Below are positions 21,203 to 57,420 of a stretch of DNA of 57,721 bases, one piece after another. The number at the start of each line of letters is the position of its first letter. Within the stretch, counting starts at the first letter, position 1. The position numbers were made by a program, and so were the translations under genes. Under the pieces are notes generated by a model. The model saw only the letters and a program-made list of their open reading frames with translations, was not told the origin of the DNA and searched no databases. This DNA is from Macrostomum lignano (Eukaryota), in NCBI GenBank assembly GCA_002269645.1, contig NIVC01004151.1, forward strand, positions 1 to 57,721, in the 5' to 3' direction.

Positions 21203-24200
21203 ATGTCGTCGAGGATTAAGCAACGCTTTGATAACATCGAGTCACCGCGCAGTTTTTGGTCCAACTTCTTGGAATGCCGCGGTATCGAGCTGCACAACGG
21301 CGTTCAGGCGCTGCTGATTCGGCACAACGTCGACGATTGCCAGACAGATTCGGAGCGCAACTGGACGATGGAGTCATTTCTCTGCGTCAGCATGGGTGCC
21401 GGCCAAAGGCACGACCCGCCTGACTGTCTCGGCCTGTCTCAGCTCTGTAACGAAATTATTGCTGCTCAACAAAGCTTGGAATTAGATAATCAACAACCGC
21501 AAACCAGTCATGATTACTGGGAACTTACGGAAGCATCGGAAAGAGCCTCGCCTTTGGAGGACATCATGTCTCAGTAATAACTTCTTTGATCAAACTGAGT
21601 CTTGTAAAATTCAAACTTGTAGTTTAACACTCCTCAATGTAGCAATAGAAATCCATGAGAAACCTTTGAGGACACGATTTTGCAAGTGATGCACATAGTG
21701 AAAATAAGAAACATTTTATCCTGCATATTTACCCATTTCTGTTAACACGAAGTGAAGACATTTTTAGACAAAAAGCACCTCACAAAAATGAAATAGGGTA
21801 CGAGCGTATGCATGCAGTAAAAGTTTTGCGTCAATACGAGCGTACATTGTTCTTATACTAGCTCTAAACTTCACGATGCTTAACCCTTCAGGACAAAAAC
21901 AGACGTGAGCATGTTTTGTATAATAAATAAGTCCTTTCAACAACTGCATCATGTTACGAAGTTGCTTGCCAATAGCCTCGAGCGACCGGACTTTTCGGAG
22001 GCAAACATTAATCGACTGATGCGGCTATCGCTCGACAGGGAAAGCCGCAAACTCTCCTTCGCCCGGTCACCCCTGCACCTGCTGGAGAGCCGCACCTCCA
22101 ACCCGCAGCATCCGTGCAATCGGCATGCAGTCTGCGATCCATCAGCCACCGTTGCCGCTTTCAGCGCGGCCGAGTTGCGCACCCGCCTAATTGAGTTTCA
22201 TTCGCAGCACTACCGCGTTAGCGACTTTCGCATAGCTGTGGCGGATCCCCGTCCTCTAGACGAACTGCAGGTAAGTCCAACTGTTTCGTAGAGCTTGTTA
22301 ACATCTCAGCATCTAAAATCTCTAGTTAACTCGTTAACATCAAAAAGCCATCAAACTATCTTTAATAATGCAATCGAAGTCAGAATACAGAACACACTGT
22401 ATCTGTTAGAACAAGAAAAGGACAAAAATGTTTTAAAATTTTCGATGATTTCAGAGCCTCATCGAGGTTGCTTTTTCGAGCATGCAAGAAAACTTGCCCG
22501 TTTCTTCACCAATCGTGAATGAGAATGTCGGTCATCCCTACGACGGCACGGAAACGGCAGTCAAGGTATTTTCATCCTTTTTGTAATAGTTATCTATTCT
22601 AAGCCATGGAAGCAATTTATTTGAATAGCACAATATTCATCCTCTATTTGTAATTTTTCGCGGCCCAGTGGCTGCAATATAAAACGAACAAAGTAACCCG
22701 TATACCGCTCGCAGATTCGCGCCTAAATGCATCTTTTAATGGCATCTACATTGCCTTTCCGCTGCCGGATCAGTCGACAAAATTCGCCTCGTCGCCGGAC
22801 CTGTACCTGCAGTTCCTGCTAGCTTGCGACAAACCGTACGGTCTCAATGCTTTTCTGAAGACTAATAGCGCGGCCGTTACTGCCTCGGATTCTGATCCCG
22901 CCACTGGCTACGACACATTTTACATTTTTGTGCACTGCAACAGAAAATTGAATCCGCGTTGTGAGGACATGGTAATGTTACGAGTAAATTTCTTTAATAG
23001 GAGCTCATCGGTATTGAGCAAAATTAACACCTCTCGATAACAAGTGCTGGAAGCTCACTTTTAGATTAAGAAATAAGATTGCCGACAAAACTGAGCTTCT
23101 TAAAGCTATTTCCAACCTTTTTTCGAGAAACCATCAAGCATCAAGTAGCGAACGGAGGCTAGTATAGTAGTATAGTAGGCATGTCTCGAACGGATCCCAG
23201 CCAGAATACTGATTTCAGGAAATCTGGACGCAATTCCAAGTTCCGACTTATCCCGAATCCCGATACTGAAATCCCCAGCGTTCGTGACAAGTCAGGGCAA
23301 AAGTTTCCGGTCACGAGTTTTGAAAATATTACTTTGCATGCAGCTCACAAGTTTCTAAAATTGTCCTGGATGGTACATGTAGGAAGGAAATTTAACTTTT
23401 TCTTAAATAAAAGGCTTAAAGCTGTTATGGATAATAAATTTCTTCGTACCCTGTGGCTCATTTGTGGTCTATAGGGTGCAGCAGTTTACTCCTTAATTAT
23501 GGATGCTCTGATTGTGACATCTTGATTCCCGTTGTGCACCTTTAGATCATCACTGCCGTCTTTCGCTACCTGGCCATGCTCCGATCAGTTGGGACGCAAA
23601 AGTGGCTTTTTGATGAGGTGCAAGATTGGCTTAACGAGTGCGAACTACATGTAAACGCGAATCAACAATGGAGGCGCTCTGACATCGACGAGCTGTGCTT
23701 CAGGCTGCGACGGTATCCGCTGCAACACGTGCTGACGGCTCGTCGCCAGCTAACGAAATACTCGGCGGAGGAGATTAAAGACTTATTGGAACTTCTGACT
23801 CCCGAACGGTGCAAAGTGTTCGTGCCCGAGCGGTTTGTTACCAAATTTGACGGACGGGCTAAGGGAACTCAGTGTAAGAGAATTTTAATTGTACAATTTT
23901 GCATGCACCCGCATTTTTTTAGCGGCAGGGGGGTTGTGTGCACCCTGGCGCACTTTAAGCGACATAGCACACAACCGGCGAGAGGCATTACTGCCCATTC
24001 CGTCGACTCCCCTGAGCAGGCATACAAGCGCGCGGATACGTACGCAGGCACACACTCACACAGGAGTGTACAGCGGCCCTAACTTTATTTTATCGTTAGG
24101 CATGTACACTTCACTGCGCCTTGGGGGGTTGGCTCTCAAGGCCGTTAATTGCACAAGCGAGCCAAGCCAAAATTCCAATTCAGCCCCAAATTAATGTGAC

Positions 24201-24680
24201 TGCACTTGGAATCTAGCCTGGGTCGCTGGCACACCAGAGCCTGCGCTAGACCGCTGGGCTACGGCCCCCCTCATGCACCCGCGTTGGTCAAGTTCATGTA
24301 AATTCACAATATTGTCGTCATTAATGAACGACTGCACAATAGGACAGTAGACGTCATTAATGAACGACTGCACAATAGGACAGTAGACGTCATTAATGAA
24401 CGACTGCACAATAGGACAGTAGAAGATCATGAAACACTACATGTAAAAGCGAATTCAATATTTTAAGCCCCATAATCCGTTTCTCATAGACTGCACAAGT
24501 TGTAAGCGCGAACTTGACGAATGCGCTGAGTACAGACTGGAGAAATTTCAACCACAACTTCTTGCCGTCTGCTCGGCTGATTGGCCATCAACTGAGTGCG
24601 AAATTGATGCAAGATTTCAACGCCCAAAACCGTCGCCAATGCGCCTAGTTGAAATGACAAAGAATCTTCTATTGAACCAG
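21203..24680 (+). CDS. M16A module D: N-half only (domains 1-2 plus linker), probably spliced to E
   Basis: Exons 21203-21574, 21962-22270, 22455-22565, 22715-22971 (1 nt short), 23546-23873, 24490-24680. HxxEH is replaced by QLCNE. No C-half exons before E. Confidence 0.7.
24317..24424. repeat. 36-bp tandem repeat x3
   Basis: GTCATTAATGAACGACTGCACAATAGGACAGTAGAC repeated. Confidence 0.9.
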
Positions 24681-25308
24681 GTTAGTTTGAACAGAAGGAC
24701 GATTATCAAATGCGGGAATTTTAGAAAAAAAGTAAATATGGAAAATCCTATTTAGAATTTGCAAGCCCTAGGAAAAGAAAATTGCTCGGGGGGGGGGTAG
24801 GACAAACTCAAATTGATGTTAACATTATCTGGGTCTATAATGACTCTTGGGGAGAATTACTTAAATGTCACGGCTTTAGGATTAGGGTTAGAGTTAGGGA
24901 TGGGGTTAGGGAGATTTCAAGGTTGACAGAGGATTTTTTAGATTTCAAGGCTTATGGGGGGCATCGCTGAGATGTCAAGGCTCACGGGGGGAAAGTTGAT
25001 ATGTTGAGGCTTGTGCAGGGGGGAATTGCTGAAATGTCAAGCCTTGCGAGTATCTGAGGTTATTGCAAAGAGAAGCTGCATGTGGTTTATTCAAAAATTT
25101 TTACTCCATTATTGTTGGCTCCCTTTTGTTGGATTGCTAGTGTATTTTTAAATGGATGATCGCTTTCTTGTCAATTAGAAGGCAATACAGCGCTAATCAC
25201 CATCTTTCAATCATTTATTTTGAGGTGGTCGGCTGTAAATCTCTAGCTGAACGACAATCGAGTTCCTTAAACGTTGCTTCGTTCGTAGTGAGACGAACCG
25301 ACTCACAG

Positions 25309-28300
25309 GGTAGCTTGCTGCCATATCTGGACCGCAGCGTCGAGCTGAGTAACGGAGTGCAAGCTTATCTGATCAGTCAGAACAGTTTTGGCGGCATTTT
25401 TAACCATAACGGTTCGGTTTTGACTATCAGCATTGGTGTGGGCCACCTGCAGGACCCGCCCGATTGCAGAGGCCTGGCACGGCTCTGCCAGCGTCTAGCT
25501 ATCTCTCGAAAGACATTAAAATTAAAATCAATTTATAATGAAAAGATGCGCGTTTTTGAAGCTCACACTGAGTACAGCGTTTGCATGGGGGGTTTCACGG
25601 AAATGCCCGTGATTTTAGAGCAGCTGGCGGCCGACATACTAAGACCCGAGTTTAGTAGGTATGAAATCGGACGAGCGCTGATGAGGGGAATGCCTGATAG
25701 TCCTACCGATTGTATACAGCCTGTTGAGAGGCTGCAGCGCTGCGCTGGCAATCCAAACCATCAGTTTAATAGGCTGCCTGACGAGCGGCTAATTACCAAC
25801 TGGACTGAGGAAAAGCTGCTGGACCAATTGACGCAGTTTCACAGCCTCTACTACTCTGGAAATTTGGTGAGGCTGGTTGTGGAGGACTCGCGTTCGCTCG
25901 ATGACTTGGAGGTGAGGGACGAACTAATAATAGTTATGCTGGATTGCATTCTTTAAAATTGAGTACAATTTTGAGTACAATTGGCTACGATTTCAGGCCC
26001 TAGTTTTGGCTACTTTTGGCCAGCTTCCAGACGCATTTGCTAATCGGATTCTGTTCGGTACGCACCCGTTCGATGGAACGAAAATGGGAGTCAAGGTGCG
26101 TTATTTTTCATGGGAAAGCATTCAAGTGCTCGGTACTAGAAACTCGTCGGGTTTGCCACTGACGTCGGGTAGTGCAGAAACCTAGAATTAAGCTGGCCGC
26201 ACACGGAATCAAATCGTCCTGCATGTAGGTGTTTTAGACAAAGCCAAGAATTCTGCAAGTACATGTACACGACGAAATTCCTAAATGTACAATATTTTCA
26301 GATCCGGTGTTGCCAGCACTCATTTTAGCACTGCACACTTAATTTAGCGCCACAGGCACTCATTTCAGCGCTGCAAGCACTCATTTCAGCGCCGCAGGCA
26401 CTCATTTCAGCGCCGCAGGCACTCATTTCAGCGCCACAGGCACTCATTTAATTGTCGGCTTTAATTGTCGCCATGCAGCAAAAATTATGCCCCCCAGATC
26501 TTTTACTGGAGGGGACATGTCCCCCCTGTCCCCCCCCGTTGGCGACGCCCCTGCGTAGGCCGGTAAAAAGGGAAGTCTTATTTGTCACATCGATAGCTAG
26601 TTTATTTTGTATGCTCTCATAGCGCTAAATGAAGTTTTACCATAGACTACTTCGGTCGAGAAAAACCCGGTTCCTTGAGAGCATACTAAATGCTTTAGCA
26701 ATACGGCAGATATACGTTCCTTAAACCATGGGGCCTCCCGCCGGCAGCACAGCTTCCGCAGCTCACCATCGCAGCCACCTGCAGCTGCACTAGTGTTTAT
26801 CTGTGGCCAGCAGCGCACCCGCAAACTCCCACAAGGTTGTACTTTACCAACCTCTAGCAGATTTCTAAGAAAATGTAGTGTAGCACCCTGTTACTCCAGT
26901 TGGAAAACTGTAAAATTAATCCCTGAGTTTTTACATTGCATTCCTTATACTCCATTGCAAAAAAACAGATTCGAAGTAGGGGCGTCAACTTGGACGAGAT
27001 TAGATTTGTCTTCCCTGTGCCAGATCAGTCTGATCTGTTTGAGACCTCGCCAGACTTGTATGTGAGCTACCTGTTCGAAACATTATTTGGAAAACTCTCG
27101 GATGCATATTCAAGACAACGAGGAGAGCTACCGGAAATTCTTCGCCGTTGTCCAGTTGCCAATCTTTTAGACTACGGCTATACTGGCTTTGACTCCTATC
27201 AAATTTCGTTCAATACAACTTTTTGCCAGAAGAACTGTTCTGCCGAGATGGAGGACGAGGTACTCAGATTTTTTTTAAGCTCTCTCTCTCTCATTTCGTG
27301 ATTTCTTGATATATTTTTGTTAAACTTTTTTCTCATTTCAGACGATCAAGTTTGTATTTCGCTTAATAGCACTAATACGAAAAATTGGACCAAAAAAATG
27401 GCTGCATGACGAAATTAGACACCAAAGGCGAACAAAACTTGCTAAAAACTTTGAAGATATCCTCTATCGCCGTGCTAACATTATAAACGTTTTGGACGAA
27501 AATTTAAGCGTTGCATCTCGACTACTGAGATTCCCCATTCACAAATTAATTTTCGCTGGCTATCTGCTCAACGAATACTCGCCTCGAGCAATCGAGGACT
27601 TTCTGACTTGTTTGTCGCCCGAAAAATGCAAAGTGTTCGTGTCGGATCTGAATCGCAAAGGCGAAGCTTCAAGTAAGTTATTAGGAGCGCAGGCAGTAGT
27701 AAAAACCTACATGTAGTTTATTTAGAAAAAAATAACTCTTTTCTTTGTTGCTGTCTTCCCAACCGGAGGGCACATATTGCTAGTCTAATTTTTGATCATC
27801 TTACAAGAACCACGCACTAGGCTGGCATTGAGGCCCATTCTACAAACGTACTTTCAGTTTGAAACACTCTGACAACACTTCATTAAATCAAAGAAGAAAC
27901 AACTGCAGTTGATAAAATAAAATAAATTGATCATAATTTAAGCGTTTCATAGTAATTCCGCAGAATCGAACTAAAGGGTCATATAATACACTATCATACA
28001 CAGGTGTAATGCTAACTCAGTAACTTGTATACCCTTCTATCTCAGACGAGCCGTCCAGCCAGGCCAAAGATGCATCTCCGCACAGTGAAGAGGAATTTTC
28101 GCCAGAACTTCTAGCCGCCTGCTCGGCACCTTGGCCTGCAAACGACTGCGAATTGGAGAAAGAATTTGAAATGCCAGAGCCGAATCCGTTTGTGTGCACC
28201 GACTTCAGTCTGAAGCCCCGAGAAGAGGTTAGTCGACACCAATTTATTCTGTTTTGCATTTAAGAGAATTTAGCGAATTTAGATTTGAGAAATGCAGCTG

Positions 28301-31300
28301 ACTTTTTTATTTGTTCTATCAATCTCACAGTCTCTACGAGGTAAAATTTTCATAAGCTTAAAACTTTTGAAGACAACACAAAAATTATACGAATATCAAG
28401 ACTTTTCGACAGAAGTGTCAAGTTAAAGTTTTGGCTTGTGAAGTTATACTGTCTTTAACTACCGGAATGCGGATGTCAAGTTTACCACCGAAATGGAGCT
28501 CGAAGAAAAAACTTCAGATCTATCTGCTGCAGTCGAGATCTCATAGAGAGATATCATCCAACTAACTTTCAAGGGCTTTCAGAACCATAGCAAAACAACG
28601 CCTTCGGCGACATCGTCCCACAACCAGCAACTCCCTTTAGAACATAATTTGCTCGTACAAGCGCGCGTCAATACTGTACGCAGACGCGCCCCACTCGTCA
28701 GCCACTTTTTGTGAGCAAGCCCCTATGGAATTTTAAACACACTCAAGCCTGTTAAACAAAAAATGTATCAGTTAAACAACTTCTATGAACCCCAATTAGC
28801 TTAAAAAAACTTTTGTTTTATTCTATCCGGCGTTTCTAGTTCAAACTGGTCTGGCAAGCAGTCGGTTTAGCCCATAACAGTAAGCTTTGGCTCTTGACGT
28901 AAAAGTGACCCCTTAGAAGAAGCTCCAGATTACCTTTTATTATCAATTCTAAGCCTAACCAAACTTTCTAACTTCACCTGCTAGCCTCATGGAGCAGGCC
29001 CGCGTCAACTTCAACTGCCGTCGTCGTGCAACGCTCGACTTTGGTTCTGCCAGGATCCCTACTTGAATTCGAGACAGGTGTTCATCGCTATCAACCTTGT
29101 AGCTCCGGAGCTATTGTCCCAGGACGCACCAGTGGTTTTGTACGATCTGTTGGAAACACTAGTCTCGTCTTTCATTCTGCCCGCCTGCGAATCGAAATCC
29201 GATTTTGAAAGATCCAACCAAAAATGGGTACCCATTGTAAACAGCCACAGTGGGATCAGCACATTTTTTGTTGGTTACTTGGAACCGGTGCTGCGGCTGC
29301 TGCCGGATGCCTTGAGTGGCATGTCTAGGTTTTCGATCTCTTCGCTTAATGAATCGCATAACAATTCGGTGAGACTCTCTTAACGCATTTGTCTTCACTA
29401 GTATATTCGGACATTTTGAGTTCATTATAAACTTCTAGATGAAGGGTGCAGTAAAAAGGCAAAAAAACTTGATGAAGTAATTAGTTTGTATAAATAGATT
29501 TTACGATTTTACGTTTCCAGTCACAAAAAACTTGAGTCCATGTCTGTGCTTGGTAATGGGATACTGTTCACGTGACTGCCAAATGTTTGCCAAACTGCCA
29601 AAATTAGACTTGACTGCCAGCAACTTGACTGTCAGTGACATTAGACTGCCGTCGATTCGTGGTAGGGTTAGGGGCTTTAGCTTAGATTTGGATAAACGTC
29701 AGAGTTAAAGATAAAGTTGGGTTAAATCTTAGAAATTACGTTTAGGGTTAGGGCTAGATTTGCAGTCAATTTGTGGCAGTCAATTGTCTCAGAAACCTTG
29801 GGAGCAGAACTGCAAAAACCATCAGCTTGCAGAGTATTCGCAAGGTTTAACTTTAAATAATATTGTCTTTAGAAATGTAACAAACGAAACTTGACAACTG
29901 CCTGTCTTGAATACTTCATTCCTCAAGATACGCTCATACTAATTAGGGTACGAAGCCAGTAGGATATCAATCGTATTAGTTTATTTCCATTTCAGAACTC
30001 CAGTTCGGACAGTTCGTCCAGTTCATCGCCAGATTCGGCAGGTCTTTTTCGACCCTCTCCGGGTACGGAGTTTGCATCAAAGTTTGATGCCATGGACTTC
30101 TTGGCAGATGCTGAGGTGGTAGCCAGGCAATTAGATTTGGCCGGATTTATTTGCTTCTCAAACTCTTATAAAGTACAAAGTGTGGATTTGACAGATGGTA
30201 AGCATTGCATCAAATAACTGTGAGAGAAAATTAGAAATTACAGAATTACATGTATATTCAACTATAATAATCTGAAAATGCCTGTCAACTTAATCTCACA
30301 ATGTGTGGAGCCCGAGTAACCTATGTGCAAAAATGATGCGTTATTTTGCTCAGAGTGACACCAGAAATCAGGGTTTGGCAAAAAAAGCAACAAAAATATG
30401 ACTTGAGAGAACAGGAAAGGTGATAGTTAGCGACTATTTTGTCAACTTAAGCTCATCAATTATTCCGTTGCTTTTTCTCCCCTATCTCAAGTCCAATTTC
30501 CGTCGCTTTTTTGCCAAACCCAGCTTCCTAGTGTCATTGTGAGCAGAATGACATATCATTTGTGTACATTGGAATTTTTGAAACTCCACTTTATGAGCTT
30601 AAGTTGACAGGCCCTTTCTCGATGTCTCATAAATCAGCTGTCTTTCATACAGATACGATTTTTGAACAGAGGCTGGAAAGACTAACAGTGACGATTCGAA
30701 CCAATCAAAAGGTGTATCTCTGTTAACAGACTAGGATTTAAAATTTGCCGAGGGTTTTTCGGCATAGGGATCAACCTCCAAAGCTCAGAGAATGTACATG
30801 CCAGACGATTTAGAAAGTCAGGACCGCTGTACACTCCTGTGTGAGCATGTGTGTGAGTTGTGTGTTCGCGAACAGTATTGGCGCGCTTGTATAAGCTCAG
30901 GAATCAGTCAAACAGGCATAATTGTCTTCTTTCTCTCGACTTATTTTTTAAAATTGATAGTGAACATAAATAATAATTCCCCTCACCCAGATGTCGAAGT
31001 CAAGGATTTAGAGTTTGTTTGGAGTCATTTTTCTAAATTCGATCGAGAATCGGACGTCAACGGAACGCCGTTGTTTGCGGACATCATGGTGTTTGGCAAT
31101 GCAACCGAAGCGGATGCGGCCAGAGTCGCGCAGACCATCCTAGCCGCAATGCCGGTACTCACTTCCAAGTCGACAGCGCAGTCACCGCCATCGCCGCAAT
31201 CGATACGAAAAAGCGAGCGACTGCTGCCAAAAGGCATTCGCAACAAGGTAGTACTGGACGTCAAAGAAGACGTCAACGAGAATTTTTCTGCCTGCGCTAT

Positions 31301-32604
31301 TGTCTTACAAATATCAACAAGCGAAGCATGGAAGGCATCTCTCTGTTGTCAATCGGTCGATGAATCATCTAAAAGGATTTGGCACGAACTGATAATTAGA
31401 TTGATTGTGCGCTTCATGGAGTTTAAAGTGAATCCTTGCAAGTCCGATATTATTGTCGCCGATGCAAAGATCGGTCGCTATGCCTGCTGCATCGTGCTGG
31501 CTTCGGTACAAAGCAAGCATCCCGCCGACGTAAGTCCTTTTCCATTGCATTTCCAAAATAAATTTTGTCCTGGGCAATAGCTATTGCGTTAAAATTTACT
31601 TCAATTTGAGACCTAATGGGGCAGATGTGCAATCGACAGCTCAGCCACAGGAATTGATGAAAACGTCTGAAAGCTGGGTACGGCTGTTCAGTCCAAGGTC
31701 CACGCAATAACTGCGGTCGCCACACTCGGTCTCAATTACCCTAGCTAATAATGGCACCCATTTTACAGCTGGGTGAACTGAAGCAAGGCAGAGTTTAGTA
31801 TATCTTTCTTGCTCAATAACACAAGTTGTTCCGAATGATTCAATAATCGAAGCCCCGACCTTTCAGTCGTAAATTCGACGCTCTTACCACTATAGGCTAC
31901 AAATCATCAGTATTTTGTTTTTTATCATCCAGATCGAACAGCAGCTTGAATTGTTCATCTCAAAATCCTGCGATTACATCGAAGAAAAATCGTCTAAAAG
32001 CATGATATCATACGAGCGTAATGTCAAGCGAGACACGTTACAGTCGATTTGTCCAACCAAATTCCAAGAACAAGCCTGTGCACACTGGAATCACATTGTC
32101 AGCGGAGATTACGACTTTAGCGACGCCTGTTCTGTCGTGAAATGCATCGATCAAATATGGAAGAAAATCGACAAAATCGAACTCTCGAGATACTGCCGGG
32201 TAAGGAGCTGCAAGCAAGCACTTTTTAAGACCTTATACTCAGCCCCATACTATAAGTGATTGCTAAGATTCTGAAAGTGTACTGAACTGCAGGGAAAATG
32301 AGTGACAATGACAATGTCGTGTCGTTATTTGCAGAGATGGCTGTCCAAGGACGCGGCGGACAGGCGCCAACTAGTAGTGCACAAAATTAATCGGGAAAAG
32401 TTTCCGAAAGATTCGACTAACGACAGCGACACCGCGGTGAGTAGCCATGGTTTTTTTGCTTCTGGTTCTCCATGAAACTGTCTGCAATTCAATTTTTTTC
32501 ATTTTCCAATAACACAGAAACCTGACATTTTTGCTGAGCTGAACAAATTCAAGCGGTGCATGGAGTCTTGTCCGATGAGCGACTCTGACCTGAACAAATC
32601 TTAA
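25309..32604 (+). CDS. M16A pseudo-peptidase E, full four-domain module
   Basis: Exons 25309-25911, 25997-26095, 26969-27259, 27342-27672, 28046-28227, 28985-29368, 29996-30197, 30991-31529, 31933-32199, 32335-32436, 32518-32604, all phase-consistent. HxxEH is replaced by RLCQR. An in-frame ATG also exists at 25156, so an independent start is possible. Confidence 0.8.
26320..26554. mobile_element. Partial copy of the hAT-like MITE with the 21-bp minisatellite
   Basis: (GCACTCATTTCAGCGCCGCAG)n followed by the terminus GGCGACGCCCCTG. Confidence 0.7.
29590..29790. repeat. Small element with TTGACTGCC/GGCAGTCAA inverted sub-repeats around a degenerate TTAGGG-like core
   Basis: Inverted motifs flank GGTAGGGTTAGGG...TTTAGGGTTAGGG. 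It resembles non-autonomous Helentron-type elements; class uncertain. Confidence 0.4.
30280..30612. mobile_element. Foldback/MITE-like imperfect palindrome (~330 bp)
   Basis: GCCTGTCAACTTAATCTCAC... pairs with ...TGAGCTTAAGTTGACAGGC; inner arms GGGTTTGGCAAAAAAAGC / GCTTTTTTGCCAAACCC. Confidence 0.7.
31610..31900 (-). mobile_element. tRNA-derived SINE copy
   Basis: Reverse complement of the SINE core and head. Confidence 0.7.
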
Positions 32605-32924
32605 TGATTCCTTAACTGACTGACTGCAATCCTTCGAATACACGTATGCCCATATTATGTACTCATGAAAATGTTTTGTTTCTCAAATAAATTGAGCGCA
32701 GACTTTTTTTCTACTCAGTCATCGAAACGTCCTAACTTTTAGCTACGTGTAAAAGCCAGGACAAGTGCAGCAAAATCATGGTATTTTCTGTGTCGGACTT
32801 TTGATTCAGTGGGAGGGTGAAAAGTCGATAAAAATTCTGACGTTTGGAATGAAATGTACTCGTAGAAAAATGAAAGATTATGCGAACTTTAGCCTAATAG
32901 TTAATAGATCAGTTTTACTTGATA

Positions 32925-39730: not shown

Positions 39731-39843
39731 GTAAGCTGGGTGCTTGTCTGAGGACTGAGGACTGATGACTGAGAACTTTTCGTCGATTAGTTAAAGTTAT
39801 ATAGATCACTTGTAGTATTTTTATTCCTCCAACATGTTTTTAG

Positions 39844-47803: not shown

Positions 47804-50800
47804 ATGCAACAGAGCCTAAAGCTTCCACAGCAGCAGTCGCCATCCCAGTCCAAGCAGCCTGAATCGGTAAATCAGCGACCAAGTGTCACAATGTCCATAA
47901 AAGTTCGCGACAACAATGTACCCTTAGTAAAAGGAATCGAAGCTTACAAGCACACAAAACGACGATGCCTGGAGCTGTCGAACGGTGCCAGTGTTCTTCT
48001 TATTAGCTGGTCAAACTTGGAGCAGATTCAGGGCTTCTTCGATCCCTACAGCGTGTTTCTTTGCGTGAACCTCAACATTGGCCGGCTTCACGACCCACCC
48101 GATTGTGTAGGCCTTGCCGAGTTGTGCCAACGACTGACGCTCTGCGGCTCCAAAAAATATCCGAACGACGAGCAGGCTGGTAAGTCAGTCAGTCCGTCTG
48201 AATCTGCTTGGCTAATTTCGCGGTGCGCTGTGGCTTTTTAAAATGGAACAGCATTTCAGCTACTAGCTGAAAGACCTAGTAGGGACGATTGACAATTCAC
48301 CTGAACACCAAAATCTCGTTAACCGCTTGGTGATCAGGATGCTAGCACACCACCGGTACAGTATACGATCGCTACTCGTACGACGTACACGTTGCTCTGG
48401 TGCATCTATAACTGGTTAAAATGCCACGACGATTGATGGTTCAAGTTATTGAATCACTCTAATCGCAGTCTGTGCAGCATAACGGCGCCAATTTAGGCCC
48501 TCAAGCAAGGCTGACTGCTGTATGGGGTTTGTACGCTCTTAATTATAATAGGAATCATGATCGAAAGGACTGCAGTTATCATTATTTAATAAGAATTGAT
48601 TGCACCTGTCCCGATTGGGCCGGTTGTGCAACTGACAGCTCACCCGCAGCTATTGCGTGGCGCATCTGAAGGCTGCGTAATGGCTGTTTAGTCCAAGGAC
48701 TGGGAGGTAGCCACACACCCTCAATAACCCCAGCTAATGCTGGGTACCCATTTTACAGCTGGGCGAACTGAAGCAATGTAGAGTTAAGTGTCTTGCTCAT
48801 TGCTCAAGGACACAAATTGTTCTAGTGGGATCTGGAATCGAACCCCCGGACCTTTCATTAGGGAGTCCAATGTTCTAACCACTAGGCTGCAATCCAGTTA
48901 ACATTTAGTAATGTTAATAAACATTGTTTAGTATAATATCCGTGTTTGTTTTGTACATTGTTCTGAAAAAAAGTTTTGGTGTATAAGAGATCCCTAGGGA
49001 AATCGAAATTTGGTTCTTACTCAAGAAAAAATGCGAGTTGCTGACAAAACTGCGCCTAATTTGCAGGTCTGCTCACGAAAGTTCAGAGAGAAAGCAGCTC
49101 ATACTCAGAAGAGATCACAATCGGGCAGCCGCAACAAGAAAGCCATAGCAACTCAATATTGTCCGAATCATTCGATTTCGACCCGCTCGCTCGAATTGAG
49201 GTCACCGAGGATCAGACAATTTACACTTTTACCCTGGAAACCAACTATCAGTTGGAGATGTTTCTGGACCATCTCTGCGCCGGGTTGCAGTGTCCGCTGT
49301 TTAACAAGACGGCAGTGGAGCGGCAGGTGCAAATCTGGCAGGCAGTCTCTAAGACGAATGCGCCCTCCCTAATAGACCAGTTAGAGCACTGCTCGGGTGA
49401 CGCCAAGCATCCCTACAACCGGCTGCACCGTCAAAGTGGCCGAACTGTTGATAAATTATCTACCGATGAGCTAATTAACCAACTGAAAGAATTTCACTCG
49501 AAAAACTATTCCGCTAATCTGTTGCGATTGGTGCTGTCGTATGCGAAGACACTGGACGAAATGGAGGTTGGTAAAAGTCGTTAATATGTGGTTGTAAAGA
49601 TTACCATGGCTATAAATAAATTATGCACCAAATACTCGAATTGACAGGCAATGGTGCTGGAGTCTCTGGGTGGAATGCAAAATTTATCGCTTCCACGTAT
49701 TCGCTTTCCTCGTCACCCGTACGATGGTACGGAAATGGCAGTAAAGGTAAAATTGTGCCGTAAGCCTGAAGCCAATTCTTTCAAAGTATTTCAATTTTTA
49801 TTGCGCCAAGAGACACAAAAAAGTTTATTAAAATAAAATGGCAACACACTAAAATTCAGCCACAAGCAAAGCTAGCGTTTTAAGATAGCGATAAACGCTA
49901 CTGCAAAGAAGGGCGTCGTATGTTTTGGGCAGCCAATTTTGGGGTCATGTCCCCCTTGACCAAAGATCATATATACACAAGATAGGCGACTTTTCATTAA
50001 CCACTGGCCATAGAAGCTAATGTGAAAAATTTTGCTACTCGCGATAGCGCGAAGATCAACTACTGAACTCCATTTCGTCAGTAGTTTCTGCAGTGCGTGC
50101 GTCGTTATTAGTTTGATTGAGTAGTAGCTTTTATTTAATTTATGAGAAACAGCTAGGGAACCAGGAGCAGAGACTTTTGCATAGTATTGGATTAAAATTT
50201 GACCTTTTTAGAACATCCATTATGCATTGGTGTGTTTAAGAAGCTTTAAATGCTGGCTAATCAATTTTACCCTTTTGAGTATAACGCACGTCAGTAAAAC
50301 AGTTTCAAAGTCCAGTGTTTACTATCGAAATGTCTATAAATAGCAACAGTACTTTACGTTTGCAGAAGGTCTTGATTGTTTATTATTACACTAATTACAA
50401 TATTTCAGATATAATTGGCCTTATGACACATATTTAATTTTGCTAATTTTTACGTTTTCCCAGACATCGGAAGTCGTTTCCTTTTACGAGTATTTCATTG
50501 AACCCAAAAACAGATCCAATGAAAAATTAAAGCAACAACATTAACCAAGTAATTATTCGAATAGAAAAGTTTTAATAGTACTACCAATAGTCGTTCAGAA
50601 TGAATAATATTACTATTAATAAGCCAAATAATTAGCAAAGTTAAATCCGTGGGCTTTATTATATAATCTACGTGGTACTACTCACAAACATAATATATTA
50701 ACGGTTTGATAGTACAATGTAGTAAAAACTGTTTTACTGCCGTGTACAGCTGATTTATAAGAAAATCTAGTATAGCGTCTTTCTACGTGTTCTTCATTCC

Positions 50801-53794
50801 TCTGTGCCCCCATGGCTACATGTACGCCACCACCAACAAATTCTAGGAGAAATGGTGATAAGACATTGAAAACCTATCAACTCATTCTCTAGGTTCGCAT
50901 CAAAGGTAAATCTCTCGGTGGAATTTACATTGTGTTCGCACTGCCCGACCAGTCTACTAAGTATCTGTCGTCGCCAGATTTATTCTTAACCTTTCTGATG
51001 CACGTTGACGAGCGCGGCGGGTTGCAAGACTGTCTGCACAGATTCGGACTGGGCTATTGTCAGTGCCGACTGTTGCCTAGCGGCAATCTAGGCTTTGATT
51101 CGTACTGCATCGCCATCAAAGGCATGTGTAAAGTTCGCGATGCGGAGAACAGAGTGAGTAGATCTATATGTGCTCAGATTATATAAAGATTGGTCAAAAT
51201 GCATATTAAATAGTCTCGCTGTAGAACGGAGAGGTGAACTTAGGTACGCGGAGTGGGGCTCAAAGTAAAGCTCGAATCACTGTGGAAATCTTACCAGACC
51301 AGTTCGGGACACTCGGCAGGGTTTCATGGTAGGAAGTTTATCAGACACATCACGAACTAGCTGGGACACTTACGAACAACTATGCGCTATCGTGAAAGGG
51401 GTTGTCTTGCGATTCAGAGCCATGAGGCTAATCCCCAAGGTACAGAACGTGTACATAACCTGACAAATAAAATATCAGGGCCGATGTACACCCTGTGTGA
51501 GAGCGTTTATGAGTTCCCAGTGCCTGCTTACAGTATTGGTACACTTGTATGGGATCAGGAGTCTGCAGAGTGGGCTGAATTGCTAAACGGCTGGTTGTAG
51601 GACGATGTAGCCAAACGCGTTGCACCATAATTAATGAATAATTAACAATAAATATATGCACTTGTTTCTGACCCGTGTAACGAATCAATACTAGACTTCC
51701 ACGTATTATACATTTTCATGTACACCTGTTATATTTAGCGCTCCATTTGCCAACACGCAGGCAATTACAGCAGTGTTCCGCTACCTGGCCTTACTGCGCG
51801 CCGTTGGCATTAACGAGCTTCAACGTAGAGAAATTTGTAAAACGCACGAATTGACTTATAATCCATTTAGTTTGACCGAGTTCGGTCCGCCGCCCGAGTG
51901 CCTGCCGCGGCGCATGCAGCGATATCCGCTCAGAGACCTGCTGGTAGCTCGTTTTAAAATGTCAAACACCGGGTCCGGCGTGCTCGTGGAATTCCTTAGT
52001 AGCTTATCACCGGATCGCTGCAAAGTTTTTGTTTCCGATACCAATGCCAGCAATAGGGAAGGTGCAACCAGTCAGTGTAAGTATTTTTGCCATTACAGTT
52101 TGGAAGTGACAAAAACAATTTGAAAAACGTTGGCCATATATATTATACTTCAGTTGGTTGATCAGATGTTGTCAGCACTCATTTTAGCGCCGCAGGCACT
52201 CATTTTGGCGCGGCGGGCACTCATTTTAGCGCCGCAGGCACTCATTTTGGCGCGGCGGGCACTCATTTTAGCGCCGCGGGCACTCATTTTGGCGCCGCGG
52301 GCACTCATTTTGACGCCGCGGGCACTCATTTTGGCGCCGCAGGCACTCATTTTGGTGCCGCGGGCACTCATTTTGGCGCCGCGGGCACTCATTTTAGCGC
52401 TGCAGGCACTCATTTTAGCGCCGCGGCACTCATTGGCGGGGGCACTCATTTTGGCGCCGCCACATTTTGGCGCCGCGGGCACTCATTTTGCGCCGCGGGC
52501 ACTCATTTTGGCGCCGCAGGCACTCATTTTGGCGCCGCCGGCACTCATTTTGGCGCCGCAGGCACTCATTTTAGCGCCGCAGGCACTCATTTTAGCGCCG
52601 CGGCACTCATTTTGGCGCCGCGGCACTCATTTTGGCGCCGCAGGCACTCATTTTAGCGCCGCCGGCACTCATTTTAGCGCCGCAGGCACTCATTTTGGCG
52701 CCGCAGGCACTCATTTTAGCGCCGCGGGCACTCATTTTGGCGCCGCAAGCACTCATTTTGCGCCGCGGGCACTCATTTTAGCGCCGCGGGCAGTCATTTT
52801 GGCGCCGCGGGCACTCATTTTGGCGCCGCGGCACTCATTTGGCGCCGCGGGCACTAATTTTGGCGCCGCGGGCAATCATTTTGGCGCCGCGGGCACTCAT
52901 TTTAGCGCCGCGGGCACTCATTTTGGCGCCGCGGGCACTCACTTTAGCACTCATTTTAGCGCCGCAGGCACTCATTTTGGCGCCGCAAGCACTCATTTTG
53001 GCGCCGCGGGCAATCATTTTGGCGCCGCAAGCACTCATTTTGGCGCCGCGGGCAATCATTTTAGCGCCGCACTCATTTTGGCGCCGCAAGCACTCATTTT
53101 AGCGCCGCGGGCACTCATTTTGGCGCCCCAGGCACTCATTTAAGCACCGTTGGCGACGCCCCTGCCCCTGCCCTTCATCTGACCCCACCCCCAACTAGAG
53201 ATTAAAAGCTTTGTAATACATCGGTATTGGCGCAAAAGTAGAGAACTTTATAATCAATATCAATATACTGTAAATATTCGTAAACAAAGTAGACATCGTC
53301 ATAAATATATAGATGATGTCAAGACACAAAAATGGAGTCAGAACACAGATTTTGGGGGACGCAAAGAGGTACATTTACGTGGGCATAAATAATAAAGAAA
53401 AAAGGGTAAAATTTAAAAGCAACGAAGAATACACTGCAAAAACTTTTTTACTTTTTTTACAAAGGGTCTAAGTGTATTCGGCCAAGTACTATTAGATTAG
53501 CTTCTTGCCACATAACTAAGTTTAGGTTTTCACGAGCGTGAATGACAGAATCATAAGGCCAGTTGAAGTGTCAGTTATCGATAGTATCATTTTTTTCACA
53601 GCCCCAGACAGCAGCAAGCCGGAGAGCGCGTCAAGTTTACAGTGGAGAAAATTCCATCGGAGCTCCTGTCGGCTTGGGCCGCCAGCTGGCCGTCGAAGTC
53701 GGAGTTCGATGCCGACTTTATTCTGACACCGATCGGTCCCAATCCGACGCTGCCTCGTCCGCATCGATTTTTGCCCTGGAAAATTCCCTCGGAG
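47804..53794 (+). CDS. M16A module H: N-half only, probably spliced to I
   Basis: Exons 47804-48179, 49067-49566, 49648-49746, 50893-51153, 51761-52076, 53602-53794 (1 nt short at ~53620). HxxEH is replaced by ELCQR, followed by the IDE-like GSKKYP. Confidence 0.75.
48585..48893 (-). mobile_element. tRNA-derived SINE copy
   Basis: Reverse complement of head, core and tail. Confidence 0.75.
50287..50744. mobile_element. Possible MITE with CAC...GTG terminal inverted repeats
   Basis: CACGTCAGTAAAACAGTTT pairs with AAACTGTTTTACTGCCGTG; no clear TSD. Confidence 0.45.
52170..53165. repeat. Expanded 21-bp minisatellite of the hAT-like MITE, ending at its terminus
   Basis: About 45 copies of GCACTCATTTTGGCGCCGCGG, then TTGGCGACGCCCCTG at ~53150-53164. 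Confidence 0.9.
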
Positions 53795-53884
53795 GTGAGT
53801 GCGAGTTTAGCAATGAAAAATGTCTTGCTGGAAATTTTTATGCTGCCATAAATAAAATCAATAGACACATCGATTAGCAGAAGG

Positions 53885-54055
53885 ATCGTGTTCATCCTAA
53901 CGCAACGCCTTCGGCGACATCGTCTCATACCCAAGTCTGCCCATTTCGCTGACTCCTGGGCACATACAAGCGTGCAAACACTCATACACACGCTCACACA
54001 GGGTTTACATCGGTTCTAACTTTCCAATCGTCAGGCATGTAGACTCTCTGGGCCT
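53885..54055 (+). repeat. R2 dispersed repeat copy in the H-I junction intron
   Basis: Matches 5495-5670 and 8940-9140. Confidence 0.75.
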
Positions 54056-54252
54056 TAAGTTAATGCGAGTCGCATACGAGCGTAAAAACCTCCCCAGCCA
54101 ATTTTCGTGTGCACAATCCCTTATTTAATGTGGCGTTCGGAATGGGACGTGTTTACACTCTGCTCTCATTTATAATTACGTGTATACTTTGATATCTTAA
54201 GTAAGATGCCTCTTTAAAGTCGCTCATAATAATCCGTTTCTCTACCCTACAG

Positions 54253-57200
54253 TTCTCTACTATTCGATCAGAGTCTTCAACGTTGATAAAATCTCGTTGC
54301 AACGATCTCGGGGCACCGGTGTCGCTCGAATACGCTACGACAAGGTGCAACTGCTTGGAGTTAACGAACGGCGCCCAAGCCATTCTGCTGCACAGCGAAG
54401 GTCTTGAAAATAAATCATTCGTCTGCGTCAGCCTTGGCGTCGGTCGGTTGCACGACCCACCGGACTGTGCGGGACTGGCTCAGCTGTGCCAGCGCCTGAC
54501 TCTGCTTGAGTCGAAGAAGTATCCAAACATAACCGAGTGCTTGCACAATCTTCTCTATATAAACAGCTATCAAGGGTCGCCGTACTACGCGACGAGCGTT
54601 TCCGACGACCAGACAACTTACCGGTTCGAAATCGACAATTCATTCTTACATGAAAGTCTAGACCGTCTTAGTGCGGGTATCCTGAGCCCTGAATTTACCG
54701 AGTCTAGTCTTACCCGTGAGCAACATCAGAACTTCTACAGTTGCAAGATTTCTGCCTTGGATTGCCTACAGCGCAGCTCGGGAAATTCAACTCATCCGAT
54801 CAATCACCTGATACAGGGCAATAATAAGACCGTGGGTTTGCTTGAGTTCAAAGAGCTGCACAAGCATCTAACTAGCTTTCATTCGCGGTACTACAGCGCT
54901 AATCTGCTGCGTGTAGCAGTGTCTAGCAGCCACAGCATGGAAGACATAGAGGCAAGAGATCATTTTTATGTCACTTTTTTAATTGAGTCAGGGGTGCTAA
55001 ACAAACAGTTTAATGTTTCAACAGGCAATGGTTCTCACAGCATTCGGTGGAATGCCGAATCTGTCAGTATCGCCGCTGTCCTGCTATACTCACCCGTTCG
55101 AGGGCTCTAAGTTGGGCGTCAAGGTAAGCTTTATCTCTCTCATGGTCTCAATTACCAGGACCACTAGAAATTGTGTCGTATCAGAATTTAGCACTTACCG
55201 TCTATGAAAAAATCTAATTGAAGGCTAAATTTCGCTCAAATTTGCGATCGTCGTAATATCGATCGTAGGAGGTAAGAAATTGTCGAATAAGTGATTGAAG
55301 ACGATAGAACGTAACTGCTACGTCCTGATGCAAACTAAGCTTCTAGTGATCATTCAAGATTTTTACAGGGCTTATAAATAATAACTTTGCATTACCTAAC
55401 TTGTCCAGATTCGAGGAAAGTCATTAAGCCTCGCGGAGCGCTGCACATCGTGTTTCCTCTGCCCGACCAGACGGAGTTGTACAAAACCTCACCCGATCTG
55501 TACGTTAGTTACTTTCTCAACAGTGACTGCGGCGGCAGTTTAAACGCCTGTCAGGATCAGCTCAATATTGCAACAGTATCCGCCGGGATGCAGAACTCCG
55601 GTTCGCTAGGATTCGATTCGTATTGTGTGACAGTGTTATTATCGAATACTACTGATCTAAGTAAAGCTGATCTGATTAAAACTGAGAACAATGTGAGTAC
55701 TTTATAAACAGAGCAGGATTATTTACAAAAAACAAGTTAGTCGGGCCTTTGGACACTGCCGAAAATAAAGGTGGCAGTCTCTCTAGCCATGACAGATGAA
55801 GGCAGTGCAGGTAAAGGCCGGTTCACATTACCACTAATTGCTATGCTGGTCAAAGATTGCCCAAACCAACAATGCACAGTCGATTCAGGTTCATTTAAAA
55901 AATAAATTTGAGCAATATTTTGTCCCCAGAGTTACTGATGGTACTACGAAGTGGTCTTCTAATAATATTGTAACTTTAAATTTCTTACATTCTTCGGACG
56001 TCCAATACTTAAGCTTATAACTTATTTTGCTTTTTAACTGTGTAGATAGACACTTTCAACAACCTTCACCTATCAAACCATTTTAAAATCTGTAATAAAT
56101 ACTCGTGCTATTGCTAGCTATATTTTATTGATGTTAACGTGGACGAATCTCAACATTTTTAGGCAATAACAGCCGTATTCCGGTACCTAACAATGCTGCG
56201 ACAGCTGGAGCCTCGGGAGTGTCTGTTCAACATGGTCCGTCTTGCTCAAAGAAGGCTGTTCAATTTCGACCGCGAAGGCGAGTGCATGGCGCCGGGCAGT
56301 GAAAAACTCGACCCGTTGCAGCGGTTCTGCGATGAGTCGCTGCAGGTGCATTTGCAACGGTATCCAGTTAAGGAGCTGCTTACTGCTAGAAGTGGCGCCA
56401 AGCTTGAATACTCGGCACAGGATATCGCGGCATTCCTTCGCTTGCTTGTTCCAACCAACTGCAAGATTTTCGTCTCCGATTTTGGAGCAGATGCCGATCA
56501 CGAGTGCTCGTTGTTAAGTGAGAATTATTTCTGTTTCTTATGGTGTATTTTTACCGCAGCACCAATCTGCTCATCTTTCCTGGTGTGATAAACGCAAGGG
56601 CGTTGCCAGAATTCTTCTTTGGGAGGCTGAGTCGTCTGGGGCTTTAGCACAAAGGGCTTTAGCACCAGGGGCTTTAGCACAAAGGGCTTTAGCACCAGGG
56701 GCTTTAGCACTCTAGGGCGCCAGCACCAGGGGCACCAGCACCAGGGGCGCCAGCACCAGGGGCGCCAGCACCAGGGGCGCCAGCACCAGGGGCGCCAGCA
56801 CCAGGGGCGCCAGCACCAGGGGCGCCAGCACCAGGGGCGCCAGCACCAGGGGCGCCAGCACCAGGGGCGCCAGCACCAGGGGCGCCAGCACCAGGGGCGC
56901 CAGCACCAGGGGCGCCAGCACCAGGGGCGCCAGCACCAGGGGCGCCAGCACCAGGGCGCCAGCACCAGGGGCGCCAGCACCAGGGGCGCCAGCACCAGGG
57001 GCGCCAGCACCAGGGGCGCCAGCAACAGGGGCCAGCAACAGGGGCACCAGCACCAGGGGCTTTAGCACCAGGGGCTTTAGCACCAGGGGCGCCAGTACCA
57101 GGGGCGCCAGCACCAGGGGCGCCAGTACCAGGGGCGCCAGCACCAGGGGCGCCAGCACCAGTGTGTAAAGTACATTGCCATAAAAAATCCGTCGTATTTT

Positions 57201-57420
57201 CGTCCGTCACTCCCCAGCACCTGGCGGCAGTCTCTGCTGCAAGCCGAAGAAGGCAAACGAGCTGCACACGCTGGAAAAGCTGCCATCGGATCTTCTCACC
57301 GCCTGCTCAGCCAGCTGGCCAACTGCCTCCATCATGGCGGACACTTTGATCAAGCGCGCCAAGGGAAAACTTGTTTATCAGTGCCGATTTTCAACTTAAA
57401 TCGAGAGAGAAAAATTTGAG
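54253..57420 (+). CDS. M16A module I (N-half visible; continues beyond the window)
   Basis: Exons 54253-54951 (GC donor), 55025-55123, 55409-55692 (1 nt short at ~55433), 56163-56517, 57218-57420 (internal frame slips). HxxEH is replaced by QLCQR. It begins at a strong acceptor, TTTCTCTACCCTACAG. Confidence 0.75.
56640..57160. repeat. 15-bp intronic minisatellite (GGGGCGCCAGCACCA)n
   Basis: About 33 copies; source of the spurious ORFs at 56525-57267. Confidence 0.95.

What the first reader, a model, noticed from the sequence alone, without database searches (positions are those of the whole stretch)
21203..57420. Three apparent N-N-C fusion genes: a duplicated insulysin N-half spliced in frame onto a second module
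D, F and H each stop after the domain-2 linker exon at a phase-0 donor (24680, 39730, 53794). The next module opens at a phase-0 acceptor in the right frame (25309, 39844, 54253). The F-G gap is only 113 nt and G has no ATG, leaving almost no room for a separate promoter. Predicted products are D1D2-D1D2D3D4, about 1550 aa (D-E) and 1700 aa (F-G). Known M16A enzymes are single N-half + C-half clamshells, and I do not know of this architecture. The N-half is a symmetric phase 0-0 cassette, which explains how it could duplicate in frame. D-E is the weakest junction because E has a possible own ATG at 25156.
Basis: partly seen in the sequence, partly recalled or inferred. Interest (0 to 1): 0.9.

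Follow-up and report, generated by a model that had tools for sequence, protein, structure and literature searches.

The report
Six-domain dead insulysin genes, flatworm
Three neighbouring genes of the flatworm Macrostomum lignano each join an extra front half of an insulin-degrading-enzyme-like protein in frame to a complete second copy, giving a ~1,650-residue protein that has lost its catalytic residues; these proteins are already in public databases but this shape has not been described for the family.

Summary
The window is a 57.7-kb contig of Macrostomum lignano (assembly Mlig_3_7) holding a tandem cluster of divergent M16A (insulysin-like) genes. Three N-half-only modules (D, F, H) each end at a phase-0 GT donor (24680, 39730, 53794), and each is followed by a complete N+C module.

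GenBank gene models built only from RNA-seq, and separate UniProt predictions, span all three junctions. They contain the predicted junction peptides VDCLAESVSI and KIPSEFSTIR.

One correction: the D-E acceptor is 25225, not 25309. It is in the same frame, and the junction peptide is LLNQVVGCKS.

The products are 1602, 1653-1680 and 1650 aa, with the order D1-D2-hinge-D1'-D2'-hinge'-D3-D4. The first halves are under purifying selection (omega about 0.13).

Every module lacks HxxEH, and every C-half examined lacks the R/Y pair. These are pseudo-proteases.

The window copy carries single-base indels that break D, G, H and I. Sister contigs are intact there, and the differences look like assembly errors.

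No other N-N-C protein appeared among the 150 closest relatives in 1.8 billion representative proteins, and I found no paper describing one. The function is unknown. Separate expression of the second module by spliced-leader trans-splicing is not excluded as a minor route.

Verdict: a real, undescribed variant of a known family, of moderate interest.

The parts
21203..32604 (+). D-E gene: 17 coding exons, 1602-aa N-N-C product (ATG 21203, TAA 32602-32604)
   Evidence: P0074 (UniProt A0A1I8HM42) maps end to end with GT-AG introns. ATG and stop checked. GenBank PAA48429 on this contig covers D exon 5 through E.
21203..24680 (+). D: first N-half module (D1-D2-hinge, 546 aa), six exons. Has a 1-nt deletion after about 22723 in this contig.
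   Evidence: Indel against C654. No substitution against C654 across the 1629-nt coding sequence.
24681..25224 (+). D>E junction intron, 544 nt, GTTAGT...TTTTGAG, phase 0 on both sides. Holds an in-frame ATG at 25156 that is open into E.
   Evidence: The same junction is found on C654.
25225..32604 (+). E: second module, complete N-half plus C-half
33829..46559 (+). F-G gene: 1680-aa N-N-C product (ATG 33829, TAA 46557-46559)
   Evidence: P0038 (A0A1I8JL62) maps end to end apart from two 1-nt frame breaks. PAA56843 and PAA61785 span the junction.
33829..39730 (+). F: first N-half module (573 aa), six exons
   Evidence: omega 0.20 against C2566.
39731..39843 (+). F>G junction intron, 113 nt (111 nt on C2566), GTAAGC...TTTTTAG. 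No AATAAA/ATTAAA and no in-frame ATG.
39844..46559 (+). G: second module (N+C). 1-nt deletions at 40128 and 45278 in this contig and in C2999; intact in C1996 and C2566.
47804..57721 (+). H-I gene: runs off the window end. The full 17-exon, 1650-aa coding sequence is intact on sister contig C2999.
   Evidence: P0002 (PAA53923) maps here. On C2999 the spliced translation equals P0002 exactly.
47804..53794 (+). H: first N-half module (582 aa), six exons. 1-nt deletion near 53622 in this contig.
   Evidence: omega 0.07 against C2566.
53795..54252 (+). H>I junction intron, 458 nt (451 nt on C2566), GTGAGT...CCTACAG. AATAAA at 53851 lies just after the read-through stop at 53849.
54253..57721 (+). 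I: second module. The N-half and the start of the C-half lie in the window. 1-nt indels near 55433 and 57355.
12135..17861 (+). C: neighbouring single N-C paralogue, used as comparator. It has a 21-nt ATG exon, then a phase-0 intron before the module's first exon.
   Evidence: P0081 (PAA48428) and P0083 mapped.

Best explanation
These are three tandemly arrayed paralogous genes of Macrostomum lignano. Each is cis-spliced into one mRNA that encodes a six-domain, catalytically dead insulysin homologue with the order D1-D2-hinge-D1'-D2'-hinge'-D3-D4 (1602-1680 aa).

Shown:
- The first module carries the ATG.
- Its hinge exon ends at the same phase-0 donor that, in the single-copy neighbour C and in the second modules, joins to the D3 exon.
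- Here that donor joins instead to the phase-0 acceptor of the next module's first exon, so the frame is kept.
- The junction introns are not multiples of three, contain stops, and vary in length between haplotypes.

Inferred origin:
- The N-half cassette is bounded by phase-0 introns.
- Either an internal cassette duplication, or a deletion between two tandem paralogues (from the post-hinge intron of the upstream gene to intron 1 of the downstream gene), would give an in-frame N-N-C gene.
- That unit was then duplicated to make three.

Inferred function:
- All N-halves lack HxxEH and the C-halves examined lack the R/Y pair, so the proteins cannot be zinc peptidases.
- They most likely act by binding rather than cleaving, as a cage, scaffold or decoy for peptides or proteins.
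- The extra N-half would be tethered by a flexible hinge, and could either compete with the second N-half for the single C-half or pair in trans.
- The genome keeps catalytic IDE genes on other contigs.
For: - Architecture and splice sites. Pfam finds two stretches each of PF00675, PF05193 and PF16187 in H-I, and two of PF05193 and PF16187 in all three genes.
- Transcript-based models across all three junctions. The annotation method is described in PMC5730564.
- Intact full-length reading frames elsewhere: H-I on C2999 and D through E on C654.
- Junction introns conserved as introns on a roughly 2.5% diverged haplotype, with indels that are not multiples of three and GT/AG kept.
- Purifying selection on the first halves: F+H show 22 synonymous against 10 nonsynonymous changes, omega 0.13, P = 4e-8.
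- G and I have no usable ATG.
- HxxEH is lost in all modules and the R/Y pair is lost.
- Catalytic IDE with HFCEH lies on C130, C2067 and C1237.
- The AF2 model of H plus the I N-half gives two IDE-half-like folds with a low-confidence joint. Its best PDB matches are human IDE and pitrilysin.
Against: - I saw no reads. The transcript evidence comes second-hand through the annotation, and isoform ratios are unknown.
- Some transcript-based coding sequences start inside the first module (PAA48429, PAA56843, PAA61786). I explain two of these (PAA48429, PAA56843) by contig-specific frameshifts upstream. Internal trans-splice sites could look the same.
- The window copy itself is frame-broken in D, G, H and I.
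- A 318-aa query centred on the junction found no transcript-derived fragments in the large protein collection.
- The tree does not resolve whether first and second modules are separate clades, so the origin story is inference.
- The binding function is inferred only from the lost catalytic residues.
Confidence: 0.82

Rival explanations
1. Operon-like pairs. The N-only module and the following N-C module are separate cistrons on one precursor RNA. The second is matured by spliced-leader trans-splicing at the same phase-0 acceptor, and the leader's terminal AUG supplies the start codon. On this view the cis-spliced fusion is a minor or by-product isoform.
For: - The M. lignano spliced leader ends in ...TTGCATG. 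About 30% of genes are trans-spliced, 15% are in operons, and the usual spacing is about 100 bp (PMC8629364).
- All three acceptors are phase 0, so a leader AUG would be in frame.
- The H>I intron has AATAAA at 53851, right after the read-through stop.
- E has its own in-frame ATG at 25156.
Against: - The annotation pipeline cuts transcription units at detected spliced-leader and poly(A) sites, yet left these genes whole.
- D, F and H have no stop codon before a strong canonical donor that is homologous to the hinge-exon donor of complete modules.
- The F>G gap has no poly(A) signal.
- An acceptor with a donor upstream in cis is normally cis-spliced (reviewed in PMC8629364).
Confidence: 0.1
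2. D, F and H are truncated dead duplicates (pseudogene relics). They are merely swept into the downstream gene's transcript, so the fused reading frame has no function.
For: - Tandem clusters often hold fragments. One such fragment (C's 3' exons, 18998-20261) lies in this window.
- The window copy has frameshifts in D and H.
Against: - omega is 0.13 on F+H.
- All six exons of each first module keep open frames and GT-AG sites despite only 25-45% identity between paralogous modules.
- The frameshifts are contig-specific and absent from sister contigs.
- The only ATG of each gene lies in the first module.
Confidence: 0.05
3. Assembly artefact: a mis-joined or collapsed tandem array creates an apparent N-N-C order.
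For: The assembly is redundant and rich in indel errors (PMC5730564).
Against: The same order and junctions occur on independent contigs: C654 and C657 for D-E; C2566, C1996 and C2999 for F-G and H-I. They also occur in the separate set of UniProt predictions.
Confidence: 0.02

Closest known systems
Insulysin / insulin-degrading enzyme and pitrilysin (peptidase family M16, subfamily M16A)
   Same: - Homologous over all domains: Pfam PF00675, PF05193 and PF16187.
- The best structural matches of the model are human IDE and E. coli pitrilysin.
- The short hinge with the LPxxNxF motif is kept.
- The genome's own canonical IDE (P0087) shares marks with this subfamily, such as HPYDG..GVKV.
   Different: - Six domains (N-N-C, about 185 kDa) instead of four (about 100 kDa; PMC12731061).
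- HxxEH replaced, for example by ELCQRL.
- R/Y pair absent.
- Only 20-24% identity to canonical enzymes, with a long stem branch.
Inactive M16 homologues (alpha-MPP; cytochrome bc1 core proteins)
   Same: They lack the zinc motif and work by binding or scaffolding rather than by catalysis (PMC11266112; PMC12731061).
   Different: Those are about 50-kDa M16B halves that pair with a partner subunit. Here every half in the polypeptide is inactive, and three halves sit in one chain.
Neighbouring single N-C paralogues in the same cluster: C (PAA48428) on the + strand and B (P0046/P0084) on the - strand
   Same: Same divergent, inactive subfamily, exon structure and hinge exon.
   Different: They have one N-half only. 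C's hinge-exon donor joins to its own D3 exon.
Other long M16A predictions in the protein library (for example P0189, 1835 aa)
   Same: More than four M16 domains in one predicted chain.
   Different: P0189 is N-C-N-C, which is two complete units and possibly two merged genes. P0097 is trypsin plus IDE. P0111 has an unrelated N-terminus. None is N-N-C.

Membership tests
Peptidase family M16, subfamily M16A (insulysin type) | Sequence and fold homology to the M16 alpha/beta domains (PF00675, PF05193, PF16187) | tested here: met
   Pfam hits lie above the curated cut-offs in D-E, F-G, H-I and C. Foldseek top hits are IDE and pitrilysin, E about 1e-32.
Peptidase family M16, subfamily M16A (insulysin type) | HxxEH zinc-binding and catalytic motif in domain 1 | tested here: not met
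   All eight M. lignano modules aligned (B-I) have no His or Glu at these positions, for example GLAELCQRLTL. Outgroups have HF(C/L)EH.
Peptidase family M16, subfamily M16A (insulysin type) | R/Y pair (LRTxxQLGY) in domain 4 that completes the active site | tested here: not met
   Absent from the C-halves of E, G, I, C and B. Present in both canonical M. lignano IDEs and in the outgroups.
Peptidase family M16, subfamily M16A (insulysin type) | One polypeptide of about 100 kDa with four domains (one N-half plus one C-half) | tested here: not met
   D-E, F-G and H-I have six domains and 1602-1680 aa. The canonical layout is taken from PMC12731061.
Peptidase family M16, subfamily M16A (insulysin type) | Short hinge between D2 and D3 | tested here: met
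   The hinge exon is conserved in all modules (WP..., xPxxxPF motif). It aligns with LPxxNxFIP of canonical enzymes.
Peptidase family M16, subfamily M16A (insulysin type) | Zinc-dependent peptidase activity | not testable with these tools
   Needs an enzyme assay. The sequence predicts no activity.
Spliced-leader-resolved operon (two cistrons) | The upstream cistron ends with a stop codon and a poly(A) site before the downstream acceptor | tested here: inconclusive
   There is no stop before the donor in D, F or H. No AATAAA/ATTAAA in D>E or F>G. One AATAAA (53851) in H>I, after the read-through stop.
Spliced-leader-resolved operon (two cistrons) | Spliced-leader reads at the downstream acceptor | not testable with these tools
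   Indirect only. The annotation pipeline that cuts at such sites left the genes whole.
Truncated pseudogene fragment | Neutral evolution and shared disabling mutations | tested here: not met
   omega is 0.13 on F+H. The frameshifts are contig-specific.

The most novel reading that the evidence does not exclude
The N-N-C chain is a functional three-lobed (or domain-swapped) non-catalytic M16 cage. Two N-halves would share or exchange one C-half. This would be a mode of assembly not seen in any M16 protein, used by the flatworm to bind or sequester peptides rather than cleave them.
Probability: 0.15. Interest if true: 0.7.

Novelty: new variant of a known kind. Interest (0 to 1): 0.45.

Why it matters
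M16 enzymes are described as two-half clamshells. A 2025 review lists M16A and M16C only as four-domain monomers of about 100 kDa (PMC12731061). A conserved, expressed chain with three halves raises a direct question: which halves pair, and what does a fully inactive 'cryptase' do?

It is also a clean example of exon-phase-compatible cassette fusion inside a tandem gene cluster.

Practically, it shows that these long gene models are not merge artefacts. It also shows that the frame breaks on this contig are most likely assembly errors. Both points matter for anyone using the M. lignano annotation.

The biological weight is limited for now. The subfamily was found only in M. lignano among the sequences searched, and nothing is known about its expression or function.

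Tried and rejected
- A 54-nt mini-intron (40120-40173) to explain G's frame change. Rejected because the frame does not fit, and sister contigs simply have one more base.
Replaced by 25225 from the gene models.
- My own guess of a D exon-4 acceptor at 22669. Replaced by 22715 once the 1-nt deletion was seen.
- Looking up PAA53923 by exact sequence for its genomic context. Nothing was returned for this genome.
- A 318-aa query centred on the H-I junction, meant to catch short transcript-derived proteins. No hits.
- Gene identifiers searched in paper texts and in the supplements of PMC5816591. No hits, so I have no expression context.
- 'Macrostomum' with 'insulin-degrading enzyme', and a search for six-domain or fusion M16 papers. 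Nothing relevant.
- The first profile search failed because the profile had more than 1,200 positions. It was redone.
- The tree of N-halves does not resolve the history. The AU test rejects neither a clade of first modules (p 0.25) nor a clade of second modules (p 0.11). Only F+G as sisters is borderline (p 0.046).
- The extra domain-1 intron in D, F and H looked like a shared marker. But the three introns are in phases 2, 0 and 1 and at different positions, so they say nothing about a shared origin.
- AF2 of H plus the I N-half (1130 aa; the whole protein exceeds the size limit) gave pTM 0.54. Superposition on IDE gave TM about 0.4-0.47 and rmsd about 17 Å. This is no confident N-N clamshell, and it says little either way.
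Full report
**What the window is.** The window is the whole of contig C4151 of a 764-Mb, 5,269-contig genome. A protein search identifies the organism as the flatworm Macrostomum lignano. The best hits are M. lignano proteins at 94-97% identity, some recorded on a contig of exactly 57,721 bp. The introns are canonical GT-AG and 73-1,727 nt long.

**Anatomy.** BLASTP of all plus-strand ORFs against each other and alignments by exon class show seven homologous insulysin-type N-half modules on the + strand.
- C (12135-17861) is an ordinary N-C gene.
- D (21203-24680), F (33829-39730) and H (47804-53794) have only the N-half exons and end with the hinge exon.
- Each is followed by a complete module: E, G and I.
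- A further single N-C paralogue lies on the minus strand at about 4.9-11.4 kb.
- A partial copy of C's last exons lies at 18998-20261.

Pfam finds Peptidase_M16_C and Peptidase_M16_M twice in each long protein, and Peptidase_M16 twice in H-I. By alignment with canonical enzymes, the first module stops inside the D2-D3 hinge, at the LPxxNxF motif. The domain order is therefore D1-D2-hinge-D1'-D2'-hinge'-D3-D4.

**Junctions.** I mapped database proteins back onto the DNA and required exact translation across GT/AG sites.
- The junctions are 24680>25225 (544-nt intron), 39730>39844 (113 nt) and 53794>54253 (458 nt). All are phase 0 on both sides.
The D-E acceptor is 84 nt upstream of the one proposed and in the same frame, so the junction peptide is LLNQVVGCKS.
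- The three introns are not multiples of three, and each reaches a stop 6-24 codons after the donor.
- On a haplotype about 2.5% diverged (C2566) they are 111 and 451 nt long, with GT and AG kept. They behave as introns.
- G and I have no in-frame ATG open to their first exon. E has one, at 25156.
- The N-half cassette is bounded by phase-0 introns in the single gene C too. C has a 21-nt ATG exon, then a phase-0 intron, and a phase-0 intron after the hinge exon.

**Evidence for one mRNA.** The GenBank annotation of this assembly is purely transcript-based. It used StringTie, TACO and a mapped de novo transcriptome. A pipeline then cut transcription units wherever spliced-leader or poly(A) reads were found (PMC5730564). 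Its genes cross all three junctions:
- PAA48429 on this contig, and PAA79061 (from D's ATG into E).
- PAA56843 and PAA61785 (F into G).
- PAA53923 (complete 1650-aa H-I).

On sister contig C2999 the 17 exons of H-I translate exactly to PAA53923. UniProt entries from a separate set of predictions give 1602-, 1653-, 1655- and 1680-aa proteins with the same junctions. I infer that these derive from the earlier 2015 annotation. No separate coding sequence for D, F or H appeared among the clusters I examined. The three accessions I found on this contig are consecutive, PAA48428 to PAA48430. I did not see reads myself, so isoform proportions remain unknown.

**State of this copy.** In the window the frames of D, G, H and I are broken by single-base indels, after about 22723, at 40128 and 45278, and near 53622, 55433 and 57355. 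Sister contigs are intact at each of these sites. Other contigs have their own private frameshifts, for example F exon 4 on C2566. Such a frameshift upstream explains why two transcript-derived coding sequences (PAA48429, PAA56843) start at an internal Met. Window and C2999 differ by 5 substitutions against 18 indel events in 13.4 kb. D's coding sequence differs from C654 by one indel and no substitution. This is the pattern of long-read consensus error, not of decay, although reads are needed to prove it.

**Constraint.** Between the window and C2566, synonymous divergence is 0.024-0.031 in F, G and H. Intron divergence is 0.020-0.025.
- F shows 10 synonymous and 7 nonsynonymous changes (omega 0.20).
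- H shows 12 and 3 (omega 0.07).
- Together omega is 0.13, and a binomial test against neutrality gives P = 4e-8.
- G is similar, with omega 0.29 in the N-half and 0.08 in the C-half. The part of I inside the window has too few changes to judge.

The first halves are therefore not relics.

**Not a peptidase.** All eight M. lignano modules aligned replace HxxEH, for example with ELCQRL. The C-halves lack the LRTxxQLGY R/Y pair. The genome keeps canonical IDE genes with HFCEH and the R/Y pair on other contigs, each present in three copies. In a tree of N-halves all the cluster modules form one clade with 100/100 support and a long stem. Inside that clade only G+I and D+F get weak support. AU tests reject neither 'first modules are one clade' (p 0.25) nor 'second modules are one clade' (p 0.11). 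A single origin of N-N-C followed by gene duplication is the simplest history, but it is not demonstrated.

**Structure.** The full chain exceeds the size limit of the predictor. A model of H plus the N-half of I (1130 aa, 31-row alignment) has mean pLDDT 74 and pTM 0.54.
- Both modules show the M16 strand-helix pattern.
- Residues 563-580, just before the junction at 582/583, fall below pLDDT 50.
- Foldseek's best matches are human IDE and pitrilysin (E about 1e-32). The TM-score is only 0.4-0.47 and the rmsd about 17 Å over the whole length.

So each half resembles an IDE half, but the model gives no confident N-N clamshell. This is weak evidence either way.

**Rival: operon.** M. lignano trans-splices about 30% of its genes and has operons with about 100-bp spacing. 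Its 35-nt leader ends in ATG (PMC8629364). A leader added at these phase-0 acceptors would give an in-frame start, so 'no ATG' and 'no room for a promoter' do not exclude separate expression of E, G or I. The H>I intron also has AATAAA (53851) directly after the read-through stop, so an H-only isoform is conceivable. Against this as the main route:
- The pipeline that cuts at leader and poly(A) sites left the genes whole.
- The first modules have no stop before a strong donor.
- The F>G gap has no poly(A) signal.

I give this rival about 0.1 as the dominant form. A minor share is possible.

**Comparison with what is known.** A 2025 review describes M16A and M16C only as four-domain monomers of about 100 kDa (PMC12731061). 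The inactive M16 proteins reviewed there, and in a pseudopeptidase review, are the M16B-type alpha-MPP and bc1 core proteins. A profile search of 1.84 billion representative proteins returned 4,477 relatives. Among the best 150, only the M. lignano proteins are N-N-C. The three other hits longer than about 1,350 aa are trypsin plus IDE, an unrelated N-terminus plus IDE, and N-C-N-C. Text searches found no paper on these genes or on a six-domain M16 protein. That library is incomplete, and only 150 hits were inspected, so the architecture could exist elsewhere.

**Verdict.** The fusion interpretation is supported by independent transcript-based models and by selection. The proteins are already deposited as uncharacterised entries. 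The architecture is an undescribed variant of M16A, and the proteins are pseudo-proteases of unknown role.

Noticed in passing
window 4912-11448, minus strand: A further single N-C paralogue of the same inactive subfamily (matches P0046/P0084, starts MEIGKILKDV...). It is arranged head to head with gene C.
   Followed up: partly
window 18998-20261: A partial duplicate of the last exons of gene C (domain 4), up to 87% amino-acid identity, lying between C and D. It is probably a fragment left by rearrangement in the cluster.
   Followed up: partly
window ~22723, 40128, 45278, ~53622, ~55433, ~57355: Single-base indels that break coding frames in this contig but not in sister contigs. Differences from C2999 are indel-dominated (18 indels against 5 substitutions in 13.4 kb), which suggests consensus errors.
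   Followed up: yes
window ~23912-24272 (intron between D exons 5 and 6): A dispersed repeat of about 360 bp, with more than 35 copies at 95-97% identity on other contigs of the genome. It is probably a young SINE- or MITE-like element.
   Followed up: no
window 32926-33500, 40889-41362, 43631-44558, 52175-53149, 56661-57161: Large minisatellites (16-, 79-, 18-, 21- and 15-nt units), four of them inside introns of the cluster and one (32926-33500) between D-E and F-G. Introns holding some of these arrays differ greatly in length between haplotigs, for example 1127 against 289 nt and 600 against 288 nt.
   Followed up: partly
window 45539-45848: A 51-nt tandem repeat (six copies) that begins at the end of a G exon. 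It therefore repeats the exon end plus the GTAGGC donor six times, giving possible alternative donors.
   Followed up: no
window 53849-53856: If the H>I intron is retained, the frame stops at 53849, and AATAAA follows at 53851. This would be a possible H-only isoform made by intronic polyadenylation.
   Followed up: no
window 21573/21892, 34413/35746, 48179/49067: Each first module (D, F, H) has an extra intron inside domain 1 that E, I and C lack. The three introns are in phases 2, 0 and 1 and at different alignment positions, next to lineage-specific inserts. F, for example, has an acidic, serine-rich insert.
   Followed up: partly
window 12944/13047 and 54951/55025: GC-AG introns (GCAAGT, GCAAGA) at the homologous end-of-domain-1 position in C and I. 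The other modules use GT there.
   Followed up: no
G000 contigs C130, C2067, C1237 and C514, C151, C4715: Two canonical, apparently active IDE genes (HFCEH present), each in three near-identical copies. This fits the redundant DV1 karyotype.
   Followed up: partly
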